From assembly GCA_002104945.1 (NCBI GenBank), contig MCFH01000019.1, positions 496,001 to 560,000 of the forward strand: a stretch of 64,000 nucleotides of DNA. The letters are read 5' to 3'. Each line of letters opens with the position of its first letter. The first letter of the stretch is position 1. Shown here piece by piece: positions 1 to 56,700 of the stretch. Made by a program: the position numbers and the translations under genes. A model generated the notes under the pieces. The model ran no database searches. It had not been told where the DNA came from and saw only the letters and a program-made list of their open reading frames with translations. Origin of the DNA: Piromyces finnis finn. Lineage: Eukaryota > Fungi > Neocallimastigomycota.

Positions 1-572
1 TCGGTGGTACGAGCTGCCTTTGTTACCAAACCTATATCTTCTGCTGTATTTAATACTTTATATATAATAGCGTTAATGATATTTTGATTGATGGTGTTTT
101 GAATGGCACCAACTGCCTTATTTACAATAATGGGTGCAATTGGATTTTTCTTGTGATTAACATAAAAATCAAATTGAGGTCTTTCAATTTTCTTTGTATC
201 AAATATTGTGATGAGTTTGGTACTAAAGTTTTCTGGAATGACTATTTCTCCGTAGTATTCACTTTTTTCTAACATATGTTTGGCATCCTTTTCATTTGTA
301 AAAATCCATTTCATATCCTTATTATCTTTTAAACCATCCACTACTAAATTTCCCATATTTATTTCTTCCCCAAGGATTACTGTTCCATTATCTTTATTTA
401 CAATAGCTATTGGTAATTTACCAGTATTACCATAAGGATTCCAATTGGAATCAATATTAAGCCAAGCATAAATACCTGGAATAATTAATAAACCTACTAA
501 AATTACAACAGCAGCAGGTCTTTTACTAATTCTTTTAATATCATCTAAAAATATAGATATAATTTTTTTCAT
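1..572 (-). CDS. YhgE/Pip (phage infection protein / EsaA-like) family membrane protein, N-terminal part; runs off the window edge
   Basis: Manual translation from ATG at 572, open to position 1: MKKIISIFLDDIKRISKRPAAVVILVGLLIIPGIYAWLNIDSNWNPYGNTGKLPIAIVNKDNG...YYGEIVIPENFS...FYVNHKKNPIAPII. This matches the YhgE/Pip N-terminal pattern (TM helix, YAW..WdPYGNT..L.vAvVN.D.G, YY..ivIP..FS, N.K.N.IAP.I). Missing from the ORF track because no stop lies inside the window. Confidence 0.85.
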   Translation of the reverse strand, partial: MKKIISIFLDDIKRISKRPAAVVILVGLLIIPGIYAWLNIDSNWNPYGNTGKLPIAIVNKDNGTVILGEEINMGNLVVDGLKDNKDMKWIFTNEKDAKHMLEKSEYYGEIVIPENFSTKLITIFDTKKIERPQFDFYVNHKKNPIAPIIVNKAVGAIQNTINQNIINAIIYKVLNTAEDIGLVTKAARTT

Positions 573-18000: not shown

Positions 18001-20419
18001 TTTCAATTTATAATAGTATTAATATAATATGGATAATAAATCTATGTATCTATGCACAATTTTTTTTTCATAATTAACCTTTTCTACTTATGAATTTGGC
18101 ATATTTCGACGAATAAACAAAAAAAGTTTGACCATTTTTCAAAAACTTAATAGGAATATTGTCCGAATAAGCAAAAAAAAAAAAAATAAATAAATACTAA
18201 TTTTAAATTATTGTTCGTTTGTAATTACTGCAGAATACTATTTAATATTACTGCCTAGTACATTTTCATCATTGAATTCTATTAATTCTTTTTTTTTTAT
18301 GTTTTATAGTTATTCCTACTATTATTCCTACCACTTTTAAATTTTATCAGCCATTTTTTATATATTTTAATTTTTTTTTTTTTTTTACCATTCAAAGCCA
18401 TTTTAAATTTTTTTTTAAATTAAACTATTTAAATACCAATAAAATTTTGCTTTTAATTATTCTGCCATTTATTAAAACGATTGTTTTAATGTGAATAACA
18501 ACTTTTTAATAATAATAAACATAATAAACATAATAATAATTAGAATAATAATAATAATTAGAATAATAATAGAGTATTAATTAATAGAGTATTAATACTA
18601 AAATGTGTATTATTAGTATTTAGTAACTAATAATGCATTTATTATTTCTTTATTTACTATTTATTATTTAAATTTTTATATTCTATCCTTCCTCTATCAT
18701 TATTGATGAATTGATATTAACGTCCTTACATTTGTACTACAATTGAAAAATTTCTACATTTTCGTATTGTTTCAAATTCTTTTTTCAGTAGATTTGGAAA
18801 GATCGATCATCTTCCATTTTTAATATTTTTAATTGGAAAGAAAAAAATAATGAAAAGGTGTGTGTGTGTTTTTTTTTAAATAGAATAAAATTAATAAAGA
18901 AAAGGAAACCAAATATACTTCCTACACTAATTTTTTTTCCAAAGTCTATATTTTCTACACTTTTCCTAATCAGCAAAAGACCCACAAAACCATTTTATTA
19001 TAAATAAACTTTTCAAAATTTTTAACCAAGACAAAACCAAGATTTTTTTTTTCAAACGATTAAAGAAAATGTTTAAAACTCTATTTAATATAAAATATAA
19101 AATTTTTGTTTTTTTATTTGATAATTTAACAAAATTAATTTATTTTTAATTAATAAATTATTAGTTCATATTTTAAACTTTATTAATTAATAAATTTAAA
19201 ATTTTCGTTGTTATTGTTTCATCACAAAATAATTATTTAAATAGTATTAAAATTTTATATATTACATTATACTTTAAATATATATAACGAATTTAGAGGA
19301 TTCATTTTATTATTTGGATTAGAGTATGGTGGGAAGTGGTAGTAAATAAATCTATTTATTATTGTTATTATTCTACGCAATAACTCTATGAACCATTTTA
19401 TTTATTTTAAATAGACTATTTCAATCTATTCTTCCGATTCTTCTTTCTAATATTTTTTTTGAATAGAATCATTGCTGTGCCAATGTTTTTTTATTTATTT
19501 TCAATTTCTGTTAAAAAAACGTTCTGTTGTACAAATTATTAATTATTTATTCCTATTCCTAACAACGGATGGAATGAAAAATAACCGAAATTTTTTGGTT
19601 TAATTTAATATTTTTTTTTTTAATTCTCATCCTTTCACCCTATTTTGAAGTTTAAAAAAATGCCAATAAAAAAATAATAAATGATTGAATTTAAAATTTC
19701 TATTGAAAATAATATATTGTAATAAATAATACACATTTATTACTATTGTATTAGTTGATACAATTTGAGTAGAATATCATTACTTTTTTGTATTGTTTTT
19801 AATATATAATTTTTATTATTTATTCAATTTAAATTTTAATCTATTGACTAATCTATTCTTTTAAAAAAAATGAATATGACACTATAGTTTTTAATTTATG
19901 CTTGATTTTAATTTACATATATTATCATTATATATTATATACACATCTATTTCATTTTTTTTTTATCAAATAGTGTAGGTACAGAATTTAAAAAAAAATT
20001 AGGAAAATAATATTCAATATAATTTCAATATTATACTAATAAACGAATAAATATATAAATATAAATAAAATAATATATAATTATTATATATGTTTTCTAT
20101 TAAAGATATATTCATTATTAAAATCACCAATTTAAAGATTAAAAAAATTTTTTATTAAATATTTATGTATTACAAATACATTTAATATGAAACATTTGTA
20201 TTTAACTAATAAAAAATTTTTTATTAATTTAATTATTTTTAATTAGTTTTCTATAAATGGAAGGTGTAAAACCAATTTAAAAAAATCTATATAAACCTAC
20301 TAATTTCTTCTTTTTTTTAAAAAATCAAATTAAATAAATAAAAACTATTAACTGGTAAAAAAAGCCAAAGCCAAAAAAAAATTATTATTAGTTTATAATA
20401 AAAAAATCAAAAAATCAAA

Positions 20420-20959
20420 ATGAAATTCCAATCTGCTTTATTAATTGCTGCTCTTGCTGCCTGTGCTTACGCTCAAGTTTCTGATGTTGAAGACGCCAAC
20501 CAAGCCCCAGAAGCTGGTCTTGATGTCCAAGAAACTAACGTTGAAGTTTCTGAAAACGAAGTTCCAGAAATTCCAGTTGAAAACGTTCCAGCTGTTAACG
20601 AACCAGCCGCTGACAACGCCGTCGAATCTGCTGATGAAGCTAACAATGACGAAGCTGCCAACGAAAACACTACTGATGCCGCTGAAGGTTCTGATGATTA
20701 CGAAGCTGGTGAAGGTTCTGATGACTACGGTCTTGAACCAACTGCCCAAGCTGATATTGATGACTACGATGAAGTTCCATCTGGTGGTCTTGACAGCGAA
20801 GCTGAAGAATCTGACGATGAATCTTCTAACACTCCATACATCGCTGGTGCTGCTGGTGCTGCTGCCGCCGCCGCTGGTGTCTTCTTCTGGATCAAGAAGT
20901 CTCAAAAGCAAGAAGGTGAAGCTGTCGAAAGCCTTCGTTCTCAATTCAACATGGCTTAA
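20420..20959 (+). CDS. Acidic low-complexity type-I membrane/cell-surface protein (179 aa), paralog of 14377..15042
   Basis: Signal peptide MKFQSALLIAALAACAYA, E/D-rich ectodomain (EGSDDY x2), TM YIAGAAGAAAAAAGVFFWI followed by KKS tail. Strong codon bias. Confidence 0.9.
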   Translation: MKFQSALLIAALAACAYAQVSDVEDANQAPEAGLDVQETNVEVSENEVPEIPVENVPAVNEPAADNAVESADEANNDEAANENTTDAAEGSDDYEAGEGSDDYGLEPTAQADIDDYDEVPSGGLDSEAEESDDESSNTPYIAGAAGAAAAAAGVFFWIKKSQKQEGEAVESLRSQFNMA

Positions 20960-22663
20960 GCAATTTAAGTAATTTTTGTAATATACAAAAAAATAAAAAT
21001 TAAAGGTTTTAAAGACAGATTATTTACTGAAAATATTATGCTAAAATATGAGTAGGATTAAGCGTATATAAACGTTTTAATTATAATCTGTCATTTTGAT
21101 ATAAAACCAATTATAGATTTATTTTTAAAGATTAGTTAGTAGTTTGTTTTTATACTCTTTAAAAAGAAGCGAATACTAAGTTTTTAAAGTAATCCAAATA
21201 GAGTTTATTTATTATATAATCATCAATGAGAATATATAATAAATTCTTTATGCAATGCATAAAGTATACATGTAAAACAAAAAAATGCTATTATTATTAA
21301 AAATATTTATTTCAACAAAAAATTATTATTTCAAGAAAATAACATGTAAAGAATAAACAAAACAAAAACAAAATAAAAAATAAAATAAAATATAAAGAGT
21401 TTTAAAAACCAAAGAATTGTTATTTTTTTTTAAATCTGTGTATTAAAGTTTTACATTTTATAATGTTGATAATAGATTTTGAAACTTATAATAATGTGTG
21501 AGTTTAACATAGTAACTGGCTACTGAGATGTTGTATTTATTTATTCATAATAATTCAATTTTTTCAAAAATTCAGTTAGAAATGCTATCATTAAATCTAG
21601 AATAAATATTTTCAATACCATTTATTATTTAATTCTGAATGAAGTTGCAGAAAGTCTGGCTAAGTTCAAGTTTTTCCAGGACAAAAATTTTGGCAAAAAA
21701 TCTAGGATAATTAACTAATTTAATAATATATTTTTATTTGATGCCATTAAAAAAAAAATAGTATATTTTTAAATGTGTGTTTCCAATTCACTTAGAGTGA
21801 CTATCAAAAATTTCAATAGTTACTTTTTTTTTTTTACTTATATTTGATAAATGTAAGATATTAATATTGAAGGAAGAAAAAAGGAAATAGAGAGAGAAAA
21901 AAAGTTGTAATAGACTATTTATTTATCAAAGATTTTATTCCAGAAAAAATAATTCCTGTGAAAAATTATAAAGAAAAGTTATATTTTTGACATTAAAAAA
22001 AAAAAGAAATGGCTTTATGGAATTAGTAAATACACCACTTTTGTTTTAAAATCAAATTCTTTATGTTATATTGTCCAATTATATTGTTTTGGTATTTATT
22101 AACTATTAAAAAACAAAAACAATGCATTTAAGAATATTATTTACTAAATTCATTGAATTATAACTGGAACATTTCAAAAAAAATTATAAATTTAATTATA
22201 CTTTATTTTTTTTTTTTTTTTTTTTATATTAATCAAAGTGTTTTCATTCATCACACAATACCTATTCCTTCGTATAATACAATTTCTTTATTTTATCATT
22301 CTAATAAATTTATTATTAGAATTATAAAATAAAAAAAAAAAAAGATCGCAAGTATTATTTTCTGGTAGGATAATGATGGATCATAAATTTAAATTTTATA
22401 AAAAAACTCTTTTAAATATAATTGGTCCATTTTTCCGATGCATTAGATATGCTTCCACCACTTGAAATTTCAGGTAATTTCAGCCTGAAGATTCTGAAGG
22501 TCTGGTAAAAATTATTTTATAAAAAAAGGAATGTGATTTTTTTTTTAAAAAATTTAATTTTGTACTACTTTTTTAATTTGCATTTCTTTTTTTTCAAAAA
22601 TTTTACAGTTAGAAAAAAAGATATATAATAAATATAGAATAACGTAAATTGGAAGAAAGGAAA

Positions 22664-24496
22664 ATGACAGAAAATATAACAAAAGAAAATATTAAAAGTT
22701 TTGGAAGTTCTTCCGTATTACTTTTACCAGGAAACTATCCTGTTACAGTGTCAATGATGAAGGCTACAAATATCAAATTTAATTCAATAGCATCGTCATG
22801 TATTGTAAAAGAAAAATCTTATCTTATTATTGAAGAAAATGGTTCAGCATACATTTCTCTGGATGTTAAATCTGTATCTATAATGCTTATTACTGCATGG
22901 GCAAATAATTGGAAATATTATGTCGGTAATTCTGTAAAAAGTGACCTTAAGGATATGGAATATGAGTTAAATAAAGATGGAAATGTATACCATATAAAGT
23001 TTCCAATTTTAGATCCTTCTGCTGATGGTGTTTACGTTCAAATGTGCGCTATGAGAAAAACAATGAATGCTTATTTGGCTATTGATTATTCATCTATTAA
23101 AGAAAAAGTTGGAATGAAATCATTAAGTGAAGATACTGAGTCAACAGAATCTTCATTAAAAGAAACTTCTACTGGAGCTAATGCTACTATTGAAAAAAGT
23201 AATACAAAAATTATAGATGGAAAAATTGTTCTTGGTACTTTAGAAAAAAAGTTAGCCCCTGGTACTTATACTGTCCCAATTAAATTAATGAATGCAACAG
23301 ATATTGAAACTCCATCCATGGCTAGTGATTGTGTTCCTTGTGCTGCCATACTTGTTATATCCGATGATGGTAAAGCTGAATTAAAAACACGTGTTCTTGA
23401 AGTTGTTATCGGTAAGGCATCAGATGTAGCTACCGAATGGAAAGTTTTCCAATCGAATTCTCCAAGTGGTACTACCTTGGACGCTACAATTATTGAATCT
23501 AGACAATATACAAATTCTGCTGGTCAAACCAATGAAGTCCCATCTGAAATTTCATTCATTATTCCACCAGAGGCTCAATCTATGAATGGTGTTTTTGTTA
23601 ATATGTTTATTGGATTAATGGGGTTCAATTCAAGTGCTTTTATTCACATTGATTATGAAAAGGCAGTTGTTGGTGATTTGGTGTATAAAGGTGATTTCCA
23701 TATTGAACAATTTGGAGAGTATGATGTTTTTGTCACTGTGTCAGTCAATGGAAAAGGTTTAATATCAAATGTTGATGTAACCGCCGATAACTTTGACGGT
23801 AGTTATATTAATACCAATAAACGTAAGATGAAAACAGCTATTAATGGTATGGTTAAAAATTATGTTGGTTTATCAGCCAAAGCTACTAAAGCAATTTCTG
23901 AGGTTAGATATGCTAAAGGTGCTAGATATTCCTCAGAAGCCATTAAAATTTCAATATTACGTGCTTTAAATTTAGAGGAGGAAGAAGAAGAAATTGAAGT
24001 ACCAGCATCTCCAATTGAAGAAGGTGAATATACCGTAGAAATTGAATATTTCACAGATGTTGTTAAACATAGTCTTGTTCAATATAAAATAAATACAGCA
24101 GATCTTCATGTTGATTCTAATGGAAAAATAAGGTTAAGTACTTTTATTATTAATGGTACAAAAACTGAACCATTATATATTAAGAAATTTAATGGTTACT
24201 ACGAAAATAATGATATTGTACAAGGAAAACTTAAGGAAGACATGGAAGTAGAAATGGATGATACCCGATTCCGTGATAAATATTTTGCTAAAGGAACAAA
24301 AATTGTAAAAAAAATCACTTTTCCATTAGAAGGTGATTATGCTCTTATTTATTATACAAACATGAATATTTATGTTCCAGTAATGAATAATCTTGATGGT
24401 GAACAAGATGGTGTTTTATACGATCATGGATGTTTTGATATTGATTGTTTTATTAAGATTTATTGGAATACATTGAAAAATAAAGCTACTCTGTAA
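22664..24496 (+). CDS. Triple NEAT-like domain + FMN_bind-like domain protein (610 aa from ATG), bacterial-like, no signal peptide
   Basis: Three repeats with the NEAT pattern L.pG.Y.V.......SMA....L.V..dG...FP...V.m.v..M....l.iD/W (~22721-23095, ~23252-23666, ~24011-24475). Between repeats 2 and 3 is V.VsV.gkg.I.nV.V...GARYSSEAI..sI.rAL, the FMN_bind pattern (normally SGATxSS.aI..AV..AL). Intronless. Confidence 0.8.
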   Translation: MTENITKENIKSFGSSSVLLLPGNYPVTVSMMKATNIKFNSIASSCIVKEKSYLIIEENGSAYISLDVKSVSIMLITAWANNWKYYVGNSVKSDLKDMEYELNKDGNVYHIKFPILDPSADGVYVQMCAMRKTMNAYLAIDYSSIKEKVGMKSLSEDTESTESSLKETSTGANATIEKSNTKIIDGKIVLGTLEKKLAPGTYTVPIKLMNATDIETPSMASDCVPCAAILVISDDGKAELKTRVLEVVIGKASDVATEWKVFQSNSPSGTTLDATIIESRQYTNSAGQTNEVPSEISFIIPPEAQSMNGVFVNMFIGLMGFNSSAFIHIDYEKAVVGDLVYKGDFHIEQFGEYDVFVTVSVNGKGLISNVDVTADNFDGSYINTNKRKMKTAINGMVKNYVGLSAKATKAISEVRYAKGARYSSEAIKISILRALNLEEEEEEIEVPASPIEEGEYTVEIEYFTDVVKHSLVQYKINTADLHVDSNGKIRLSTFIINGTKTEPLYIKKFNGYYENNDIVQGKLKEDMEVEMDDTRFRDKYFAKGTKIVKKITFPLEGDYALIYYTNMNIYVPVMNNLDGEQDGVLYDHGCFDIDCFIKIYWNTLKNKATL

Positions 24497-24744
24497 TTCT
24501 TAAAAAAATACAGTGAAAAAAAAAAAAAACCACTATAAAATCCATACAATGAAAAAAAAAAAAGAAATAAAAATCATTATTTCTTTATATACCATAGTAA
24601 TAATTAAATCTCAATTAGATATATCTTTTTTTTTTTTTATTTTTTTGCTATTTCTAACTTGATATGTATACATATATATATATTTAAGGTTATAGCTAGT
24701 CTACTACTAAATAAATAGATTATTAAATAAGATAGACAAGAGAG

Positions 24745-24745
<1 letters not shown>

Positions 24746-24806
<61 letters not shown>
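24746..24806. repeat. (AAT)n microsatellite
   Basis: Direct trinucleotide run. Confidence 0.95.
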
Positions 24807-24807
<1 letters not shown>

Positions 24808-25394
24808 TCAAAAGTGATATTAATTATTATAATTCTATAAACAACAACAACAGTAATAGATATATAAATATTTTAAAATAGTACTATAATAACATCGAAA
24901 TATAAAAATTATAAATCATTAATTTATATTCCATTAAAAAAAAAATAATAACAAAATCAACTTTAATTAAAAAGCAACGATCAATAACAATAAAATTACA
25001 ATTAAACCGATAAAAATATAAAATACTCTTTTGAAAATATTATTATTAACCGTCTTTTTTTTTTATTTTATTTTATTTTAATGAGTTCATTTATAATATT
25101 TATTTTTTTTTATAAAATGATAAATAGATGAATGATATAATACAGCACGGCTACTATAATACATATGTATTTCATTTATATTTATGTATATTTGTATAAT
25201 GATTTAAATAGAAATATTAAATAATAAGTATTATAAAAAGTTTATATATATTTAAAAACATTAAACATTTTATTATATATATATATATATTTTCTTCCTT
25301 TGAATTTGAATTAAATATACAAAGATAGATAATGATAGATGATAATTTTAATTTAATGTAAAACTTGTTTTTCTATACATATAAAAAATAGATT

Positions 25395-25435
<41 letters not shown>

Positions 25436-25472
25436 GAAAATACTAATATTAATTTATAGTGATTTATAGTGA

Positions 25473-25503
<31 letters not shown>

Positions 25504-25723
25504 TTCAAAATTATTATATTCTTATGAAATAATTAAGTAAACATTATTATATTTCAAAAAAAAAAAACAAACAAACAAACAAACAAACAAAAAAAAAATA
25601 GTTGGTTATATTTATTTCAGATTCAAATATTAAATTAAATTTAAATCTATATCTAATTTTTTCAATATTATTTTTTTTTTTTTTTGAATTCTTTTTCTTC
25701 TTCTATTTGTAGTATAAATAGTA

Positions 25724-28316
25724 CTATTTATATTTATATTTTAACTGTGAAACAGCCTTATAAATATTTACACTTTTTTCAATATTTTGTAACAAGTTAT
25801 CTCTAGCATTTTCATTTAATTTACAGCCACAAGAGGTAGAATCATGAACTAAACATTTTTCATGTCGTATATATATAAAATATGTTATTGGATTATAACC
25901 TTCTTTTTTGGTAATAAAAAAGATTTTATCCCATGAAAGAAATACAAATATACTAATATAACAAATTGTATTTAATGCTATATCATAACAAATTCTTGAA
26001 TATCTATGATCCTTTAAAATAGAAAGACTAAAAAGCTTTTTTTTTTTTTTTTTTTTTTTTTAATAATATATATTTTATATAAGTATGGTTAGAATTTAAT
26101 TATTTATATTCATTAATGGTAAAAAAAAAAAAAAAAGTTAATCTATATTTACATTCATTAGTGGACCGGTTGCAATAGAAACATATGAGGAATATGTAAT
26201 ATAAATTACATATTTAAATATAATTTCAAATCGTGAAGTTATTTTTCCAATAAATATAAGTAAAAATATTATTAATACGTAAATTGAGTTGTAAAATAAA
26301 TCAGGTTTATCGAGATTACATTGAAATGCAAATGCATCTTTATTTAATACTAATTCTTTTTCTTTATCTTCATTTTTTTTATAATCCCAGAAATAATAAA
26401 GTATTGTAGCTACGGTGAATAAAATGAAAAATAAATATAAAACTTGTATTCTAATATGGAAATAATGAGTACTTTTAACTTTTTTATAATAACTATTGTT
26501 GATATCGGTAAACCAACTTGAATTTTCACTTTTTGTTTCTGAATCTTTAAAAGTTAAATAGGAAACTGAAAATTTACCGGAATACCTTATTTCATTGGAT
26601 TTTGCAACATTATTATGGGTAGTGTTATTTAGAGGATAGGAAACACATTCTCCATCCACATTTTCTAATTCATCTTTTAAAAACTTAAATTTTTCCTCAT
26701 TTTTTTTCTTGTATCCTAATCTATAATTAATAACGAGGTTTTCATAGCATACAGTAAGTATTGTGATTATACCGACATGCTTAAGAAAGAAATTGATGGC
26801 ACATCCATTGAAATCCATATAGGTAACAAACAAATTACTTATAAAATAGATTATTATTCCAAATGAAAATTGTAAATTTTGTTTGAGTCCTGTATCCTTA
26901 ATAATATTTTCATTACGATATATTATTAAAAATAGAATGAAAAGAGATACAATCACTACAATTGGTATAGTACCAATTAAAATAATTAATTTTAATTTAC
27001 TATAAAATCATGAATTATAATCAAAAAAAAAAAAAAAGAAAGAATTTTTTTTTTTTAGTATTTTATAAAATTTATATCTATTTATTATTTATATTAAAGT
27101 GTACCTAAAATCAACAACTATTTTATCGTCACAAACTTTTCCTTGATATCCAGCATTACATTGACAATTATTTTTATAGGGATCATTTTTTAAATTATCT
27201 TCACTTGGGTAACATATACCATTTTCTTTATTACATTCTGGCTTACATAGTGCATTTTCACAACGTAAAATATTATTATTATCATAAATCGCGATTTGAT
27301 GTTTACTACAATAGTTTACCATTACTTCTATATCTGGGAAATCAAATTTAATTTCTTCATAATAATTTTCAATGGATATCTTTAAAATATATAAACTAGC
27401 ATTTGCAATTACTTTAACATTATTTAATTCACATACACCTACATATAAGCATTTTTTTTTATTATTTCATTATAGTTTTTAACATTAAAATAATGAAGAA
27501 TTTGTGAAAAAGAATATATATATATATATTTTAAAATAATATCGTTATTATTATATTATTAAATTATTATGCTAATAGTCATTTAATATATATATATATA
27601 TATAAATATATTCATGAATTTATATTTACCATTAATAAAAGTTCCAATATTTTTCGTTAAATAAAAATTAACATTATCTCCATTCTTATTATCTGGGCTA
27701 CTTAAGGAAAGTTTTAGTGTTAAGGAAGAATAGTATTTTGTTATATCATTAATTATATTATTATATTCATCTAATAATAAAAATTTTAGGGAAAAGAAAT
27801 TTCCAGAAGTAATGGTAATTCTATTATTTTTTAATGTTGTATTCAGTGAAATGTAATAGGGTTTAGTTGTAAAGTCATTGATAAATGAATTTACGGTATT
27901 ATTTTCAAATTTCCAATTTTTTATATCCATTACATTGAACATATTTTGATCCTTTGAATTTGGAGTATATATTCCTCCTCCCATAATCCCTGCTTTATTT
28001 TTAATAATTTCGTTATTTTTACTAGTGGCTAAAAATAATTTATTATAATTGGAATAGACGGCTCCTCCAAAATTTTCTGCTTCGTTTTCAATAAAAGTAT
28101 TATTTTCAAATTTTATTACATTTTCATTAATATTTCTCGGACTATGCTTCTTTTTATTATTATCATATGAAGCTTCAGCATTAGTTAAATATATTGCTCC
28201 TCCATTAATTCCATAATTTTTTTTGAAAGTATTTGAAAACAAATCAAGATTCATATCTTTAATATTGCTAATACATCTTTTTTTTTTTTTTTTGAATTTG
28301 AATTTGAAAGGAAATA

Positions 28317-40060: not shown

Positions 40061-40923
40061 TGAAATTTGAAATATATAGGAATAGAATAAAAGATAAGAA
40101 ACAAATCTTTTATTCATAAATTATAATAATAATAGTAATAATAATAATAATAATATTATTAGTTAAATAATTTATTAACTCTTTTTTTTATATTATATAT
40201 TAATTACTCTATTTTTTTTTCATAATCTATTTATCTTTCTTTTTTTTTTTGGATATATTTTTTTTTATTATCATCATAATTAAAAGTGAGTTAGATTTAA
40301 GTGGTAATTATTTAGGACAAGATGGGGTTATGTTTTTATCTACTGCTTTAATGAATAATAGTACATTGAAAGTACTAAATCTTGCATCCAATAATATCAC
40401 AGATGATCAAGAATTGTATGGAAGAACTCTTTTAACGCCCATAGCATCAAAATCAAATATTGCTACCCCTGCCGTACCTAATCCAGTAGAAGTTGGAGGA
40501 TTAGTATCCGGCACGAGTACCATTACTGGTGATAATTTAATGAATGAACTAGATGAAAATAAAAGTAAAGCGTTATCCTCAAATCTTGTTGAAGATAATA
40601 ATTCTGTATCTATGACTACATCTACACTTACTTATTTAGCTGAAGCTGTTTCACGAGAAGAATCTGCTATTACTCATTTAGATTTACGTTATAATAATAT
40701 TGGTAATAATGGTGGTGAAATTATGTTACAAGCACTTAAAACGCGAAAAGCAATCGTAGTAGCAAAAAAGAAAACTGCACCCGTATTTATTTGTCAGGTT
40801 ACTGAAAGAATGAAATCCGATATATTTTCAAAAATATTTGATATTAATAAATTTATGTTAGAACAAGAAAAGAAACGATCTGGTAAAAAAGGAAAAAAAG
40901 GAAAGAAAGGAAAAAAGAAATAA
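38863..40923 (+). CDS. RNI-like leucine-rich repeat protein with Lys/Gly-rich termini (430 aa, 4 exons)
   Basis: Exons 38863-39096, 39284-39415, 39714-40003 and 40287-40923 splice in frame. Repeats ELDLSGNYLGQDG, LKVLNLASNNI and THLDLRYNNIGNNGG. Both ends carry KKGKK-type tracts. Confidence 0.85.
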
Positions 40924-53743: not shown

Positions 53744-56700
53744 TTATTTCTTGTTGTTATTCTTTTTCTTATTGTTTGATGGCTTAATACCCTTTCTTTT
53801 GAGTCTCTTTTCTTCTTCAGCTATATTAATTAATATTATTAAAAAATTATTGGATTCATTTAATAATTGTTCATATAAAAATTCATATTAATAACAATTA
53901 AATGTATAATACTATAAATTCTTTATTAAATATTTTATAAAAATAATAGTTTACCCTTTATTATTTTAGCATCTTCTTCATCATCGAATTTAATTTCTTC
54001 TTCAACAACAGTATTTTCTTCAACATCTTTTTCTTCTTCATCTTCTTCCTTATTAACCTTTGGAATCTTATTAGAAAATTTCTTAAACTTAGAAACGTAG
54101 AAACCATCCATGTTATGAGTGTGTGGGTAGTATCTTCTAGTTAACTTTAATGATGGATTGAAAGTCTTTCCACGGAAACTATGTTTTTTGGGAAAAAAAG
54201 ACATTAAAAAATTAATATTTTTATTAAAATTAAAAAGAATAAAATAAATCTAGTGGTAACCTATTAATCTATTCATAAAATTTTTACCTAGTAAAACCTT
54301 CCTTTCCGAAATCAAGACCAGTTGGAACTAATTTAACATTTGGACGTTTTCTTAAGGCATAGTTAACAACTTCTTCATCTTCTTCAACAGTAATAGAACA
54401 AGTGGAGTAAACAATGTAACCACCAGTCTTTGAATTGGCATCAACAGAATCAATAGCACTTAAAAGTAATTCTTTTTGAATTTGGGTAACCATTTGGAAA
54501 TCTTGTTCAGACTTGTTAACTTTAACAGATGGATCCTTAGCAATAACACCAGTACCACTACATGGAGCATCAAGAAGAACACGATCAAAACCACCAATAA
54601 CATTTGGGAATTCACGACCATCATAATTACAAACAACAGCATTCTTAATACCAAGACGGTGAATATTGGCAATAACAGCCTTAATTCTATCTTTGTTAGC
54701 ATCGTTAGCAAATACACAACCAGTATTCTTAATTAAGGCAGCTATTATTTTAATAATTAGAATAAATATTCAAAAAAAAAAAAAAATATTGGTTAATTTG
54801 GATCATTATTAAAAAAAAAACCGGTTCATCAATAAATATAGGATTAAAAATATATATTGGATAATTAATTTTGATCATATATATTTTTCATGGAAAAAAA
54901 TTTTTTTTCCTAAAGTAAATTGACGCGTAATACTTACAAATATAAGAGGTTTTACCACCAGGAGCAGAGCACATATCTAAAATTCTTTCATTTTCTTGTG
55001 GTGCAAGAGCCATAACTGGTAAGAAGGAAGAAGCAGCTTGAAGCATATAGTGACCAGCAAGATATTCTGGAGTGGCACCAATTGGTACTGGAGAATCGAA
55101 AATTTGAAGACCAACCTTGGACCATTTACCAATTGGTTCAAGATTGACACCTCTGTTGATAAGAGCTTGAGCTAAATCTCTTCTTCTAGTCTTTAAAGTG
55201 TTAGCACGAATAACAATTGGTCTTGGAACTTCATTAGCTTCAAAGAATTCAATAGCTTCGTTAATTGGGAATAAATCTAAGAATTTACTTAAAAGGTAAT
55301 CATTATAACCATAGTATTGACAGAGATCTTTCTTTAATTGATCCATGTAATCAGTTCTACTCATTTCTGGATCACGCATTTCACGGAAGTTGTTTAAGAT
55401 CTTGATAATATCTTGAATTCTTTGTTGAATGAGTGTTAAATCTGGAGCCATCATAGAATCTTTTTCAATTTCTTGTCCACTAGTTAAAACCATCTTTTCA
55501 GTTTCGGCAACATTAATCTTTAATTCTTCTTCAGCTAACTTTTCATCTTCCTTTTGTCTTTCATCTAATTCTCTAGCTTCTTTTTCAATTTCCAACTTTT
55601 TTAAAGTACAAATGAAAATTTAAATTATTGTTTTATTTTTAAATTAAAATAAAATATTGGTTAAAATATATATTAATATATTATATTAATTTTTCTTTTC
55701 TTTAAATTATATAATAATAGATTGAAATAAAATTATTACCTCTTCTTCTTCTTCTTCTTCATTTTCTTCATCTGAACCAAAGTTGAAGGAAGTCTTCTTA
55801 ATAACATATTCATCATTCTTTTTTAAATATAAAAAATATAAATAAACGATTTAAAATATATAAAATATAATTATTAATAAAAAGATATTATATTTTTATT
55901 TTTTTAAAAAAAAAGAACTTTATAAATAATTCTTTTAGATATTGTATTTTTCTTTTGAAAAAAAAAACAATTTATATAAATTCTGCAGTTTTCATTCAAT
56001 TTTAAATATTAAATTTTTAGAATTAATTTTTTAAATTCATATTTTTATATGGTTTGACTTGATAATTCAAAAAATCTACATTACTATAAATTCAATATCA
56101 TAATTTATCGTCATTATTGTTATATCAAATTTTTCAATTAAATAAAAAAGGACAAAGATGATTTTATTTTCTTCTAGTAAAAAATTACTCTCTTAACTAT
56201 TAAATATTTTTTGATGATTTTTCTGTTTTATTTTCAAAAGAAAAATACTAATCAAATGATTATCAAAAATATTTTCATTAAATTGAATTACTCACATCTA
56301 CATCATCAAATTCATCAATATCATCGAATTCATCATCCTCATCATCATCTTGTATAGTTTCAACATTATCCCAGGATTCATCATCAATTTTATTATTTCT
56401 CTTAATGACAAATTCTTCTTCATCATCTTCCTTCTTTTGTGCTTTTTCCTTCTTTGGTTGTTGTGGTTGTTTCTTTGGTGGATTCTTTGCTTTCTGAGCT
56501 TGAGCCTTCTTAGCTCTGATTTTATTTTAATTTATTTTTATTTTTTTTGTAAATGTTATTTTTGTTATTATTATTATTATAAAATGATTGATTTAAAGGA
56601 AATAATAATAAAAAAAAAGAGAAAACAAAAGTTTATTGGTGTATGTGTTGATAAATTGAATTAAAAATATTATATTTAAAATTTTTAAAATTAAATTCAT

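What the first reader, a model, noticed from the sequence alone, without database searches (positions are those of the whole stretch)
22664..24496. Fungal, signal-peptide-less triple-NEAT protein: candidate horizontally acquired heme/iron-handling system
Seen: an intact, intronless 610-aa ORF with three NEAT-like repeats, embedded in poly-A/T and (AAT)n host DNA. It has no N-terminal hydrophobic signal and no LPXTG or TM anchor. Established: NEAT domains are heme-capture modules of Gram-positive cell-surface proteins (Isd, Shr families). Inference: the gene came from a gut Firmicute and was repurposed as a cytosolic or unconventionally exported heme/metal binder. The repeats lack the Isd-type YxxxY tyrosine. 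They carry Met at both putative ligand positions (SMAS..GLMG, SIAS..CAMR, YVPVM), suggesting Met-type coordination as in streptococcal Shr/Shp. Several Cys residues sit near these sites (SIASSC, SMASDCVPC, HGCFDIDC). I know of no characterised eukaryotic NEAT protein.
Basis: partly seen in the sequence, partly recalled or inferred. Interest (0 to 1): 0.85.

Follow-up and report, generated by a model that had tools for sequence, protein, structure and literature searches.

The report
Bacterial heme-receptor core in gut fungus
An anaerobic gut fungus that cannot make its own heme carries and transcribes a gene taken from gut Clostridia that encodes the ligand-binding core of a bacterial cell-surface heme-uptake receptor, now without its export signal, wall anchor and flavin-attachment site, so it probably handles heme inside the fungal cell.

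Summary
Window 22664-24496(+) is an intact, intronless 610-codon ORF in about 20% GC eukaryotic DNA, by far the longest ORF in the window. RNA assemblies from three studies are colinear with it. They start 35-67 nt upstream of the ATG, so there is no hidden signal-peptide exon.

The protein has four modules, not three: NEAT-like 1, NEAT-like 2, an FMN_bind-like domain this note missed (earlier scan note s1-180872 flags it), and a divergent NEAT-like C-terminal module. The window protein does not reach Pfam NEAT or FMN_bind. Membership rests on homologues, profile comparison and predicted folds (pLDDT 96) whose best PDB matches are Shp, IsdX1, IsdX2 and Hbp2 NEAT domains.

All 200+ relatives found appear bacterial. 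Every named genome is a gut Clostridium, and every top hit inspected has a signal peptide. They usually lie in Shr/Shp/HtsABC-like uptake operons. The fungal copy nests inside a Lachnospiraceae/Eubacteriaceae clade on a long branch and has host-like GC3 (0.16).

It keeps 82 of 96 family-conserved residues, including the Shr-type Ser-Met lip and the hairpin Met. It alone has lost the ApbE flavinylation motif (SGAT to KGAR).

Best reading: an old, domesticated transfer that now acts as an intracellular heme binder. Heme binding is inferred, not shown.

The parts
22597..22663 (+). 5' untranslated region of the mRNA. It has no ATG and contains the in-frame TAA at 22640-22642. A TATA-like stretch lies at about 22621-22636.
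   Evidence: RNA contigs of X2 and X5 begin at 22597/22598, and the X4 contig begins at 22629. Sequence read.
22664..24496 (+). Intronless coding sequence, 610 aa plus stop. GC 0.305, GC3 0.162.
   Evidence: RNA contigs are colinear with no gaps.
22685..23113 (+). NEAT-like module 1 (aa 8-150). The lip reads S41-I42-A43..C46, so the family Met is replaced by Ile. On beta7 and the hairpin it keeps Y124, M127 and M130.
   Evidence: It aligns with the repeat family A1 and deviates at 3 of 26 conserved columns. It is 30% identical to the weak-NEAT region of P0005.
23114..23218 (+). Ser/Thr/Glu-rich linker (aa 151-185). The one non-synonymous strain difference, E156D, lies here.
23219..23677 (+). 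NEAT-like module 2 (aa 186-338). The lip is S218-M219-A220..C223. M314 lies on beta7 and M319 in the hairpin. The family Tyr is Phe at 311.
   Evidence: Model pLDDT 96.7. Top PDB folds are Shp, IsdX2-N5, Hbp2-N2 and IsdX1. The family profile hits Shr NEAT at E 6e-5. Column counts.
23678..23983 (+). FMN_bind-like domain (aa ~339-440). It is homologous to Pfam FMN_bind domains of the bacterial relatives.
   Evidence: 42-43% identity to P0002 and P0003 across their Pfam FMN_bind hits. It keeps 18 of 24 conserved columns.
23906..23926 (+). Degenerate flavinylation site (aa 415-421, R-Y-A-K-G-A-R) where relatives have D-x-V-[ST]-G-A-T. The acceptor Thr is Arg421.
   Evidence: All ~90 aligned homologous domains but one (P0036, whose alignment breaks off within the motif) carry Thr or Ser at the acceptor position; the window alone has KGAR. 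4 of 7 motif columns are changed against 10 of 89 other conserved columns, Fisher p = 0.008.
23996..24493 (+). C-terminal divergent NEAT-like module (aa 445-610). It keeps all 13 family-invariant residues, including H469, Y563, Y570-V-P-x-M574 and W601.
   Evidence: Alignment A2. hhalign against the repeat family gives probability 96.6%, E 5.6e-10. Model pLDDT 95.9. Top PDB folds are the IsdX1, Hbp2 and IsdX2 NEAT domains.
24497..24640 (+). 3' untranslated region; the far end is approximate.
   Evidence: The RNA contigs run to 24501, where the aligner stops at an A-run. The X2 contig carries 137 further letters.

Best explanation
The gene is an old horizontal acquisition by an anaerobic gut fungus. 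The scaffold length, and a known transferred gene on that scaffold, point to Piromyces finnis. The source was a gut Clostridium of the Lachnospiraceae/Eubacteriaceae kind.

What was kept is exactly the ligand-binding core of a bacterial cell-surface heme-uptake receptor: two NEAT-like modules, an FMN_bind domain and a third, divergent NEAT-like module. The signal peptide and the C-terminal wall-anchoring parts (SLH, LRR_5 or fn3 in the relatives) are gone. The gene is transcribed as an unspliced mRNA whose first AUG is the ORF start. The product is therefore made in the cytosol unless it leaves by a non-classical route.

Shown: the homology, the NEAT folds, the nesting in a bacterial clade, host-like composition, transcription, retention of family-conserved residues, and specific destruction of the ApbE flavinylation motif.

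Inferred: the NEAT-like modules still bind heme through Shr/Shp-type ligands. These would be the Ser-Met lip plus the hairpin Met in module 2, and His469 plus Met574 in the C-terminal module. On this reading the protein serves a heme-auxotrophic fungus as an intracellular heme-binding, buffering or hand-over protein. The flavin domain can no longer be loaded covalently. It would act either as a structural spacer or as a non-covalent FMN site.
For: The ORF is intact and cannot be open by chance, P ~1e-24. RNA contigs from three studies are colinear from 22597/22629 to beyond 24501 with no gaps, while the intergenic stretches beside it have depth near 0.

210 relatives were found, of which 150 are listed. 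All ~58 top hits whose N-termini were inspected begin with Gram-positive-type signal peptides. All 49 GTDB loci are Clostridia. In the tree the window lies inside a starred (97) clade of 32 Lachnospiraceae, Eubacteriaceae and Clostridiales rows. GC3 is 0.162, like host ORFs (0.16-0.29); relatives have a median of 0.49 and a minimum of 0.18.

Of 96 family-conserved columns, 82 are kept despite an end branch of 1.52 changes per site. The pocket residues S, M, A, C and the two Met are kept in module 2, and H, Y and M in the C-terminal module.

In bacteria the cassette gene heads or neighbours NEAT/Shp, Peripla_BP_2, FecCD and ABC ATPase genes. 31 of 49 GTDB loci have such a neighbour within 8 kb.

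Shr uses Ser-Met in the lip plus a second Met as heme ligands (PMC12796733). Anaerobic gut fungi need external heme (PMC8561657).
Against: The window protein itself reaches no Pfam threshold. No ligand was tested.

Module 1 has Ile in place of the lip Met, and module 2 has Phe in place of two family Tyr.

The fungal branch is very long, and the flavin site is destroyed, so the original redox function cannot be intact.

No orthologue was found in any other fungus or metagenome. The only population data are two SNPs, so no dN/dS could be computed. NEAT domains have only been characterised outside the cell. Peripla_BP_2/FecCD systems also import corrinoids and siderophores.
Confidence: 0.6

Rival explanations
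1. Transcribed relic. The gene was transferred, lost its export signal, anchors and flavin site, and is drifting without a function. The open frame and the expression are leftovers.
For: The flavinylation motif is uniquely lost. The end branch is long, 1.52 against a median of 0.23. No orthologues were found elsewhere. It is a single copy with no partner genes beside it.
Against: An open frame of 610 codons at 30% GC has a chance of ~1e-24, and the composition is fully ameliorated, so the transfer is not recent. 82 of 96 conserved columns are kept, binomial P ~2e-29 against 30% chance retention. The changes in the two NEAT modules and the C-terminal module are within the range of the bacterial relatives. 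The gene is present in RNA assemblies from three studies.
Confidence: 0.1
2. It is still an extracellular hemophore or surface receptor. It would leave the fungal cell by a non-classical route, or be released on lysis, and capture heme from digesta for uptake.
For: Every known relative works outside the cell. The fungus needs external heme (PMC8561657). Conserved Cys residues near the pockets are kept.
Against: The mRNA starts 35-67 nt upstream of the first AUG and encodes no signal peptide. There is no anchor, dockerin or TM segment. Loss of the flavinylation Thr fits a compartment without ApbE.
Confidence: 0.12
3. The modules bind another tetrapyrrole or ligand, such as a corrinoid, a chlorophyll breakdown product or a metal ion, or they bind a protein partner instead of heme.
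For: The canonical SxxxxY/YxxxY heme signature is missing. Peripla_BP_2/FecCD importers also carry B12 and siderophores. Some NEAT domains bind hemoglobin rather than heme (PMC4143258).
Against: The operon partners carry Pfam NEAT and HemeBinding_Shp domains. The lip Ser-Met aligns with the Ser-Met pair of the Shr NEAT2 lip, whose Met is an axial heme ligand (PMC12796733). Shr and Shp bind heme without YxxxY.
Confidence: 0.13
4. Assembly contaminant or chimera: a bacterial gene wrongly joined to fungal DNA.
For: The gene is bacterial-type and intronless, and its only relatives are bacterial.
Against: GC3 of 0.162 is lower than in any bacterial relative and equals that of host genes. A short-read DNA contig spans 22238-24501, including 426 nt of AT-rich upstream flank. 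RNA contigs include AT-rich UTRs colinear with the genome. The gene lies on a scaffold of 857,073 bases. The best identity to any bacterium is ~50%.
Confidence: 0.01

Closest known systems
Shr and Shp of Streptococcus pyogenes (NEAT-type heme receptors with methionine axial ligands; PDB 9w5y, 9w5z, 2q7a)
   Same: The beta-sandwich NEAT fold is shared: Shp is the best Foldseek match of module 2. The family profile hits Shr NEAT at E 6e-5, with the lip Ser-Met aligned. There is no YxxxY, and a second Met is conserved in the beta7-beta8 hairpin. The bacterial relatives sit in Shr/Shp/HtsABC-like operons.
   Different: Sequence identity is only ~12-19%. The window protein has no signal peptide or anchor and is encoded by a eukaryote. 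It carries an FMN_bind-like domain between the NEAT modules. The C-terminal module has an invariant His where Shr has the lip Met region. Heme binding is untested.
Clostridial group of NEAT domains (Honsa et al. 2014, PMC4143258)
   Same: These are gut or anaerobic Clostridia with multi-NEAT surface proteins. YxxxY is absent and a Met is conserved in an extended beta7-beta8 loop. That paper's Table S1 lists FMN, SLH, LRR and fn3 among additional features, the same partners seen here.
   Different: That group mostly keeps SxxxxY; this family has S-M-A-x-S-C. None of that group has been characterised. The window copy is fungal and truncated to the core.
ApbE-flavinylated FMN_bind domains (NqrC, RnfG, PplA; Pfam PF04205)
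   Same: The domain is homologous to the FMN_bind hits of the relatives at >40% identity and keeps 18 of 24 conserved columns.
   Different: The defining [S/T]GA[S/T] acceptor motif reads KGAR, and the upstream Asp is Arg. The window protein itself does not reach the Pfam model. The protein is not extracytosolic. No ApbE was found in the scan's notes on this genome.
Bacterium-to-Neocallimastigomycota gene transfers (bioRxiv 10.1101/487215; Ciach et al. 2024, PMC11291939)
   Same: The gene is intronless, of Clostridia origin, expressed and ameliorated in composition. The same scaffold carries another listed transfer, ORX51100.1.
   Different: Neither paper's main text mentions heme, NEAT or FMN. 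This gene was not found in the stored part of the 2024 supplement. Most described transfers are CAZymes or metabolic enzymes, not receptor cores.

Membership tests
NEAT domain (Pfam PF05031) | Match to the Pfam NEAT model at its gathering score | tested here: not met
   The whole window protein gives no NEAT hit even at E <= 1, and module 2 alone gives none. Transitively, 29 of 50 aligned family modules hit NEAT at E <= 0.01, and P0003 scores 44 bits against a cut-off of 32.8.
NEAT domain (Pfam PF05031) | Eight-stranded immunoglobulin-like beta sandwich of NEAT type | tested here: met
   AlphaFold models of aa 186-338 and aa 445-610 have pLDDT 96.7 and 95.9. The top Foldseek PDB matches are NEAT domains only (Shp, IsdX1, IsdX2-N5, Hbp2-N2), with probability 1.0 and TM by target ~0.7. 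Module 1 was not modelled; it belongs by alignment.
NEAT domain (Pfam PF05031) | Isd-type heme signature: SxxxxY in the 3-10 helix and YxxxY on beta8 | tested here: not met
   The Ser is invariant, but the motif reads S-M/I-A-x-x-C. There is no YxxxY on beta8. The same is true of Shr, Shp and the clostridial NEAT group (PMC12796733, PMC4143258).
Shr/Shp-type (methionine-ligated) NEAT domains | Lip Ser-Met pair and a second Met in the beta7-beta8 hairpin | tested here: inconclusive
   The lip Ser-Met aligns with Shr's. It is present in module 2 (S218-M219); module 1 has Ile. The hairpin Met is conserved in 42 of 50 family modules and kept in both window modules. No residue-level structural superposition on the ligands could be made with these tools.
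Shr/Shp-type (methionine-ligated) NEAT domains | Binds heme | not testable with these tools
   This needs spectroscopy on recombinant protein.
Gram-positive surface heme-uptake systems (Isd, Shr-Shp-HtsABC) | Secreted and wall-anchored; encoded with a Peripla_BP_2/FecCD/ABC importer | tested here: not met
   The relatives meet it. The window gene has no signal peptide, no anchor and no such neighbours.
FMN_bind domain (Pfam PF04205), ApbE substrate | Match to the Pfam model | tested here: not met
   The window protein gives no hit. The aligned regions of P0002, P0003 and P0004 hit FMN_bind at E 1e-7 to 1e-8.
FMN_bind domain (Pfam PF04205), ApbE substrate | [S/T]GA[S/T] motif with the flavinylated Ser/Thr | tested here: not met
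   The motif reads KGAR at aa 418-421. All ~90 homologous domains except P0036, whose alignment breaks off within the motif, have Thr or Ser at the acceptor position. Motif definition from PMC8238504.
Horizontally transferred gene, bacterium to fungus | Nested inside a bacterial clade, physically and compositionally part of the host genome, and expressed | tested here: met
   Tree; GC3 and flanks; DNA and RNA contigs; scaffold of 857 kb.

The most novel reading that the evidence does not exclude
A eukaryote has converted the core of a bacterial surface heme receptor into a cytosolic flavo-heme or heme-chaperone protein. The NEAT-like modules would hold scavenged heme for a heme-auxotrophic fungus. 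The flavin site, which ApbE can no longer load, would have been rebuilt with Arg415, Lys418 and Arg421 to grip the phosphate of free FMN non-covalently. That would give an intracellular heme or iron reductase or a heme hand-over device. It would be the first functional NEAT protein of a eukaryote and an example of a covalent flavoprotein turned back into a non-covalent one.
Probability: 0.15. Interest if true: 0.8.

Novelty: new variant of a known kind. Interest (0 to 1): 0.6.

Why it matters
Anaerobic gut fungi need heme from outside (PMC8561657), and none of the papers read here says how they take it up, carry it or store it. This gene gives a concrete, testable candidate for that step.

It also widens the known range of the NEAT fold, from Gram-positive cell surfaces to the inside of a eukaryotic cell. 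The selective loss of the ApbE flavinylation motif, while everything else is kept, shows which part of a bacterial extracytosolic module cannot survive a move to a host that lacks the modifying enzyme.

On the bacterial side, the work exposes a widespread, apparently uncharacterised class of clostridial heme receptors with a built-in flavin domain.

Tried and rejected
- Direct Pfam, NCBIfam and PDB sequence searches with the whole protein gave nothing significant. Only the exhaustive HMMER search and family profiles opened the case.
- The word-indexed homologue search found just four relatives because of its length window.
- The C-terminal module profile had no Pfam or PDB sequence match; a dynein hit at E 0.004 was judged to be chance.
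- I looked for an upstream signal-peptide exon. It is rejected because two RNA contigs end at 22597/22598, the 5' UTR has no ATG, and an in-frame stop lies at 22640.
- I looked for fungal orthologues or paralogues. There are none among the 150 listed hits, to judge by N-termini and amino-acid composition. There are none in the metagenome scans (all fetched loci >=31% GC), and none in this scan's notes.
- Pfam scans of neighbouring ORFs gave no partner genes.
- The HGT surveys do not mention the gene in their main text or in the stored supplement.
- Residue-level superposition of the models on heme-bound NEAT structures was not possible because coordinates are not exposed.
- dN/dS was not possible: only two SNPs were seen, E156D and one synonymous.
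- The contamination reading is rejected (see rivals).
Full report
**Observation**

The ORF listing shows one long ORF, 22649..24496 on the + strand, whose first ATG is at 22664 (610 aa). An in-frame TAA lies at 22640. It is the longest ORF in the window; the next is 366 aa. With its own base composition the chance of 610 open codons is about 1e-24. The window averages 20.5% GC and the flanks 18-21%. They hold long poly-T/A runs and an (AAT)n array.

**Transcript**

Four runs labelled RNA, from three studies, hold the stretch. I laid three of them and the DNA run on 20300-26200. This gave RNA contigs of 1.9-2.0 kb, colinear with 22597/22598/22629 to 24480/24501 and with no gaps or joints inside the gene. 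The intergenic stretches 21482-22269 and 25225-25618 have depth near zero in the same runs.

The mRNA is therefore unspliced and starts 35-67 nt upstream of ATG 22664. The 5' UTR has no other ATG. The protein really begins MTENITK... and has no signal peptide. A DNA contig spans 22238-24501, linking the gene to 426 nt of AT-rich upstream flank. One run differs at two sites: E156D in the linker and one synonymous change.

**What the protein is**

Pfam, NCBIfam and PDB sequence searches with the whole protein gave nothing significant. The exhaustive HMMER search gave 210 relatives (149 at E <= 1e-10, 150 listed), at 33-47% identity for the stronger matches. The ~58 top hits whose N-termini I inspected all begin with a Gram-positive-type signal peptide.

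Pairwise alignments and domain scans of the relatives give this architecture:
- NEAT-like module 1, aa 8-150
- Ser/Thr/Glu linker
- NEAT-like module 2, aa 186-338
- FMN_bind-like domain, aa ~339-440
- Glu-rich linker
- a conserved C-terminal module, aa 445-610

Module 2, FMN_bind and the C-terminal module recur as one cassette in dozens of bacterial proteins. One relative, P0011 (844 aa), matches residues 12-605 in a single stretch and then continues into SLH wall-binding repeats. The fungal ORF begins exactly where the bacterial mature proteins begin (the F-G-S...P-G-x-Y motif). It ends a few residues after the last module. It is the receptor core without export signal and anchors.

**Is it NEAT?**

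- Of 50 aligned repeat modules (A1), 29 hit Pfam NEAT and 11 hit HemeBinding_Shp at E <= 0.01; the window's own modules do not.
- The A1 profile hits the solved NEAT domains of Shr (E 6e-5), Hbp2, IsdX1 and IsdX2.
- The C-terminal module (A2) has no Pfam or PDB sequence match. It does match the repeat profile by hhalign at probability 96.6%, E 5.6e-10 over 129 columns.
- AlphaFold models of module 2 and the C-terminal module have pLDDT 96.7 and 95.9. Their best Foldseek PDB matches are NEAT domains (Shp, IsdX2-N5, Hbp2-N2, IsdX1), with probability 1.0 and TM by target about 0.7.

So three NEAT-fold modules are real, but they are divergent members reached transitively.

**Pocket residues**

In the repeat family the lip reads S(50/50)-M(35/50)-A(49/50)-x-x-C(41/50). 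Two further Met are conserved, on beta7 (43/50) and in the beta7-beta8 hairpin (42/50).

The HMM alignment puts the family Ser-Met on the Ser-Met of the Shr NEAT2 lip (chain 9w5y). In Shr NEAT1, Ser389 contacts a heme propionate and Met390 with Met475 are the axial ligands; NEAT2 uses Met997 and Met1107 (PMC12796733). The clostridial NEAT group also lacks YxxxY and has a conserved Met in an extended beta7-beta8 loop (PMC4143258).

Window module 2 keeps Ser, Met, Ala, Cys and both Met. Module 1 has Ile for the lip Met. The C-terminal module keeps all 13 invariant residues of its family, among them His469 in the lip region and Y570-V-P-x-M574 after beta7. That these residues are heme ligands is inference from position.

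**The flavin domain**

In about 90 homologous FMN_bind domains the ApbE acceptor motif is [ST]-[GS]-A-T. The acceptor is Thr in all but two: one has Ser, and in P0036 the alignment breaks off within the motif. The window alone reads K-G-A-R, and the Asp three residues upstream is Arg. The motif definition is from PMC8238504.

At family-conserved columns the window deviates as follows:
- module 1: 3 of 26
- module 2: 3 of 26
- C-terminal module: 5 of 46, all conservative
- FMN_bind: 6 of 24, four of them within the seven motif columns

The motif is hit more than all other conserved columns (Fisher p = 0.008). Overall 82 of 96 conserved columns are kept. The fold and the NEAT pockets have therefore stayed under constraint, while the covalent flavin site was specifically given up. 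That fits a compartment without ApbE.

**Origin**

A scan of one genome per prokaryotic species found 49 loci, all gut or anaerobic Clostridia (Lachnospiraceae, Eubacterium, Blautia, Dorea, Oscillospiraceae, unnamed Clostridiales). A likelihood tree of FMN_bind plus the C-terminal module (115 rows) places the window inside a starred (97) clade of 32 Lachnospiraceae, Eubacteriaceae and Clostridiales rows. Its end branch is 1.52 against a median of 0.23.

GC3 of the ORF is 0.162, as in host ORFs of the window (0.16-0.29) and below every bacterial relative (median 0.49, minimum 0.18). No closer relative exists in the protein collections or in two metagenome scans; the best is about 52-54% in the C-terminal module, and all loci are >=31% GC. 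This is an old, ameliorated, apparently lineage-restricted transfer, not contamination.

The scaffold length of 857,073 equals that of a Piromyces finnis scaffold in the supplement of PMC11291939. That scaffold carries the listed transfer ORX51100.1 (ABC2_membrane_3). This matches earlier scan notes of a YhgE/Pip gene at window 1-572. The organism is therefore very probably P. finnis (inference).

**What the bacterial relatives do**

P0009 heads an operon of: NEAT-FMN_bind-NEAT-LRR_5, then NEAT+HemeBinding_Shp, Peripla_BP_2, FecCD, an ABC ATPase, DUF454 and two ABC exporters. P0018 lies beside Shp+SLH, NEAT+SLH, Peripla_BP_2 and MarR genes. In 31 of 49 GTDB loci a homologue of that binding protein or permease lies within 8 kb.

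This is the Shr-Shp-HtsABC layout, so the cassette belongs to surface heme-uptake systems. Neither flavinylation survey I read mentions NEAT, so a flavin-bearing heme receptor appears to be uncharacterised.

**Mechanism proposed for the fungal protein**

Anaerobic gut fungi lack a complete heme pathway and need heme in the medium (PMC8561657). A cytosolic protein with three NEAT-fold pockets, two of them with the full candidate ligand set, is best read as an intracellular heme binder. It could act as a buffer, a store or a hand-over protein. The flavin domain would be either a spacer or a non-covalent FMN site.

Shown: homology, fold, origin, transcription, constraint and loss of the acceptor motif. 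Inferred: heme binding, ligand identity and location.

**Rivals**

- Transcribed relic: about 0.1. It is disfavoured by the open frame, amelioration and retention of conserved columns.
- Non-classically exported hemophore: about 0.12.
- Another ligand, such as a corrinoid: about 0.13.
- Contamination: about 0.01.

**Novelty**

No paper in the library pairs NEAT domains with anaerobic fungi. The HGT surveys do not mention heme, NEAT or FMN, and the gene was not in the stored part of the 2024 supplement. That supplement lists a Neocallimastix californiae protein (ORY54297.1, Cluster_253) whose bacterial relatives carry FMN_bind. It is a possible second case that I could not test.

I rate this a new variant of a known kind. 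The domains are known and transfer into these fungi is common. A eukaryotic, signal-less NEAT-FMN_bind core with a dismantled flavinylation site has not been described in the papers I could search.

Noticed in passing
L054:885-12865 (bacterial locus); L004-L052: In gut Clostridia the NEAT-like + FMN_bind + NEAT-like cassette heads Shr/Shp/HtsABC-like operons. 31 of 49 species-representative loci have the importer within 8 kb. The two flavinylation surveys I read never mention NEAT, so flavin-bearing heme receptors look like an uncharacterised bacterial class.
   Followed up: partly
window 1-572 and the whole scaffold: The scaffold length of 857,073 matches a Piromyces finnis scaffold in the supplement of PMC11291939. 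That supplement lists ORX51100.1 (ABC2_membrane_3, YhgE/Pip-type) and ORX51145.1 (PDDEXK_3, AAA_19) on it as bacterial transfers. The first fits earlier scan notes at window 1-572.
   Followed up: partly
not in the window (Neocallimastix californiae ORY54297.1, Cluster_253 of PMC11291939): This is a signal-peptide-bearing, predicted extracellular fungal protein. Its nearest relative is Pseudobutyrivibrio ruminis, and its bacterial relatives carry an FMN_bind domain marked 'lost' in the fungus. It may be a second, secreted relative of this family in another gut fungus. The sequence could not be fetched.
   Followed up: no
window 20420-20959 (+): A 179-aa ORF with a signal peptide, a long acidic Asp/Glu/Ser/Asn-rich body and a C-terminal hydrophobic segment. 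It has no Pfam match, and its word depth in the RNA contigs is tens of times that of the NEAT gene.
   Followed up: no
window 54888-55595 (-) and 40249-40923 (+): Exon-sized ORFs with RsmB/NOP2-type methyltransferase domains and with LRR_6 repeats. These are ordinary host genes that support a eukaryotic context.
   Followed up: no
window 22315-22345, 22536-22613, 24933-24956, 25091-25118: Many short-read DNA and RNA contigs break or join to other sequence at these AT-rich points. This suggests dispersed short repeats flanking the gene; several were skipped by the aligner as repeats.
   Followed up: no
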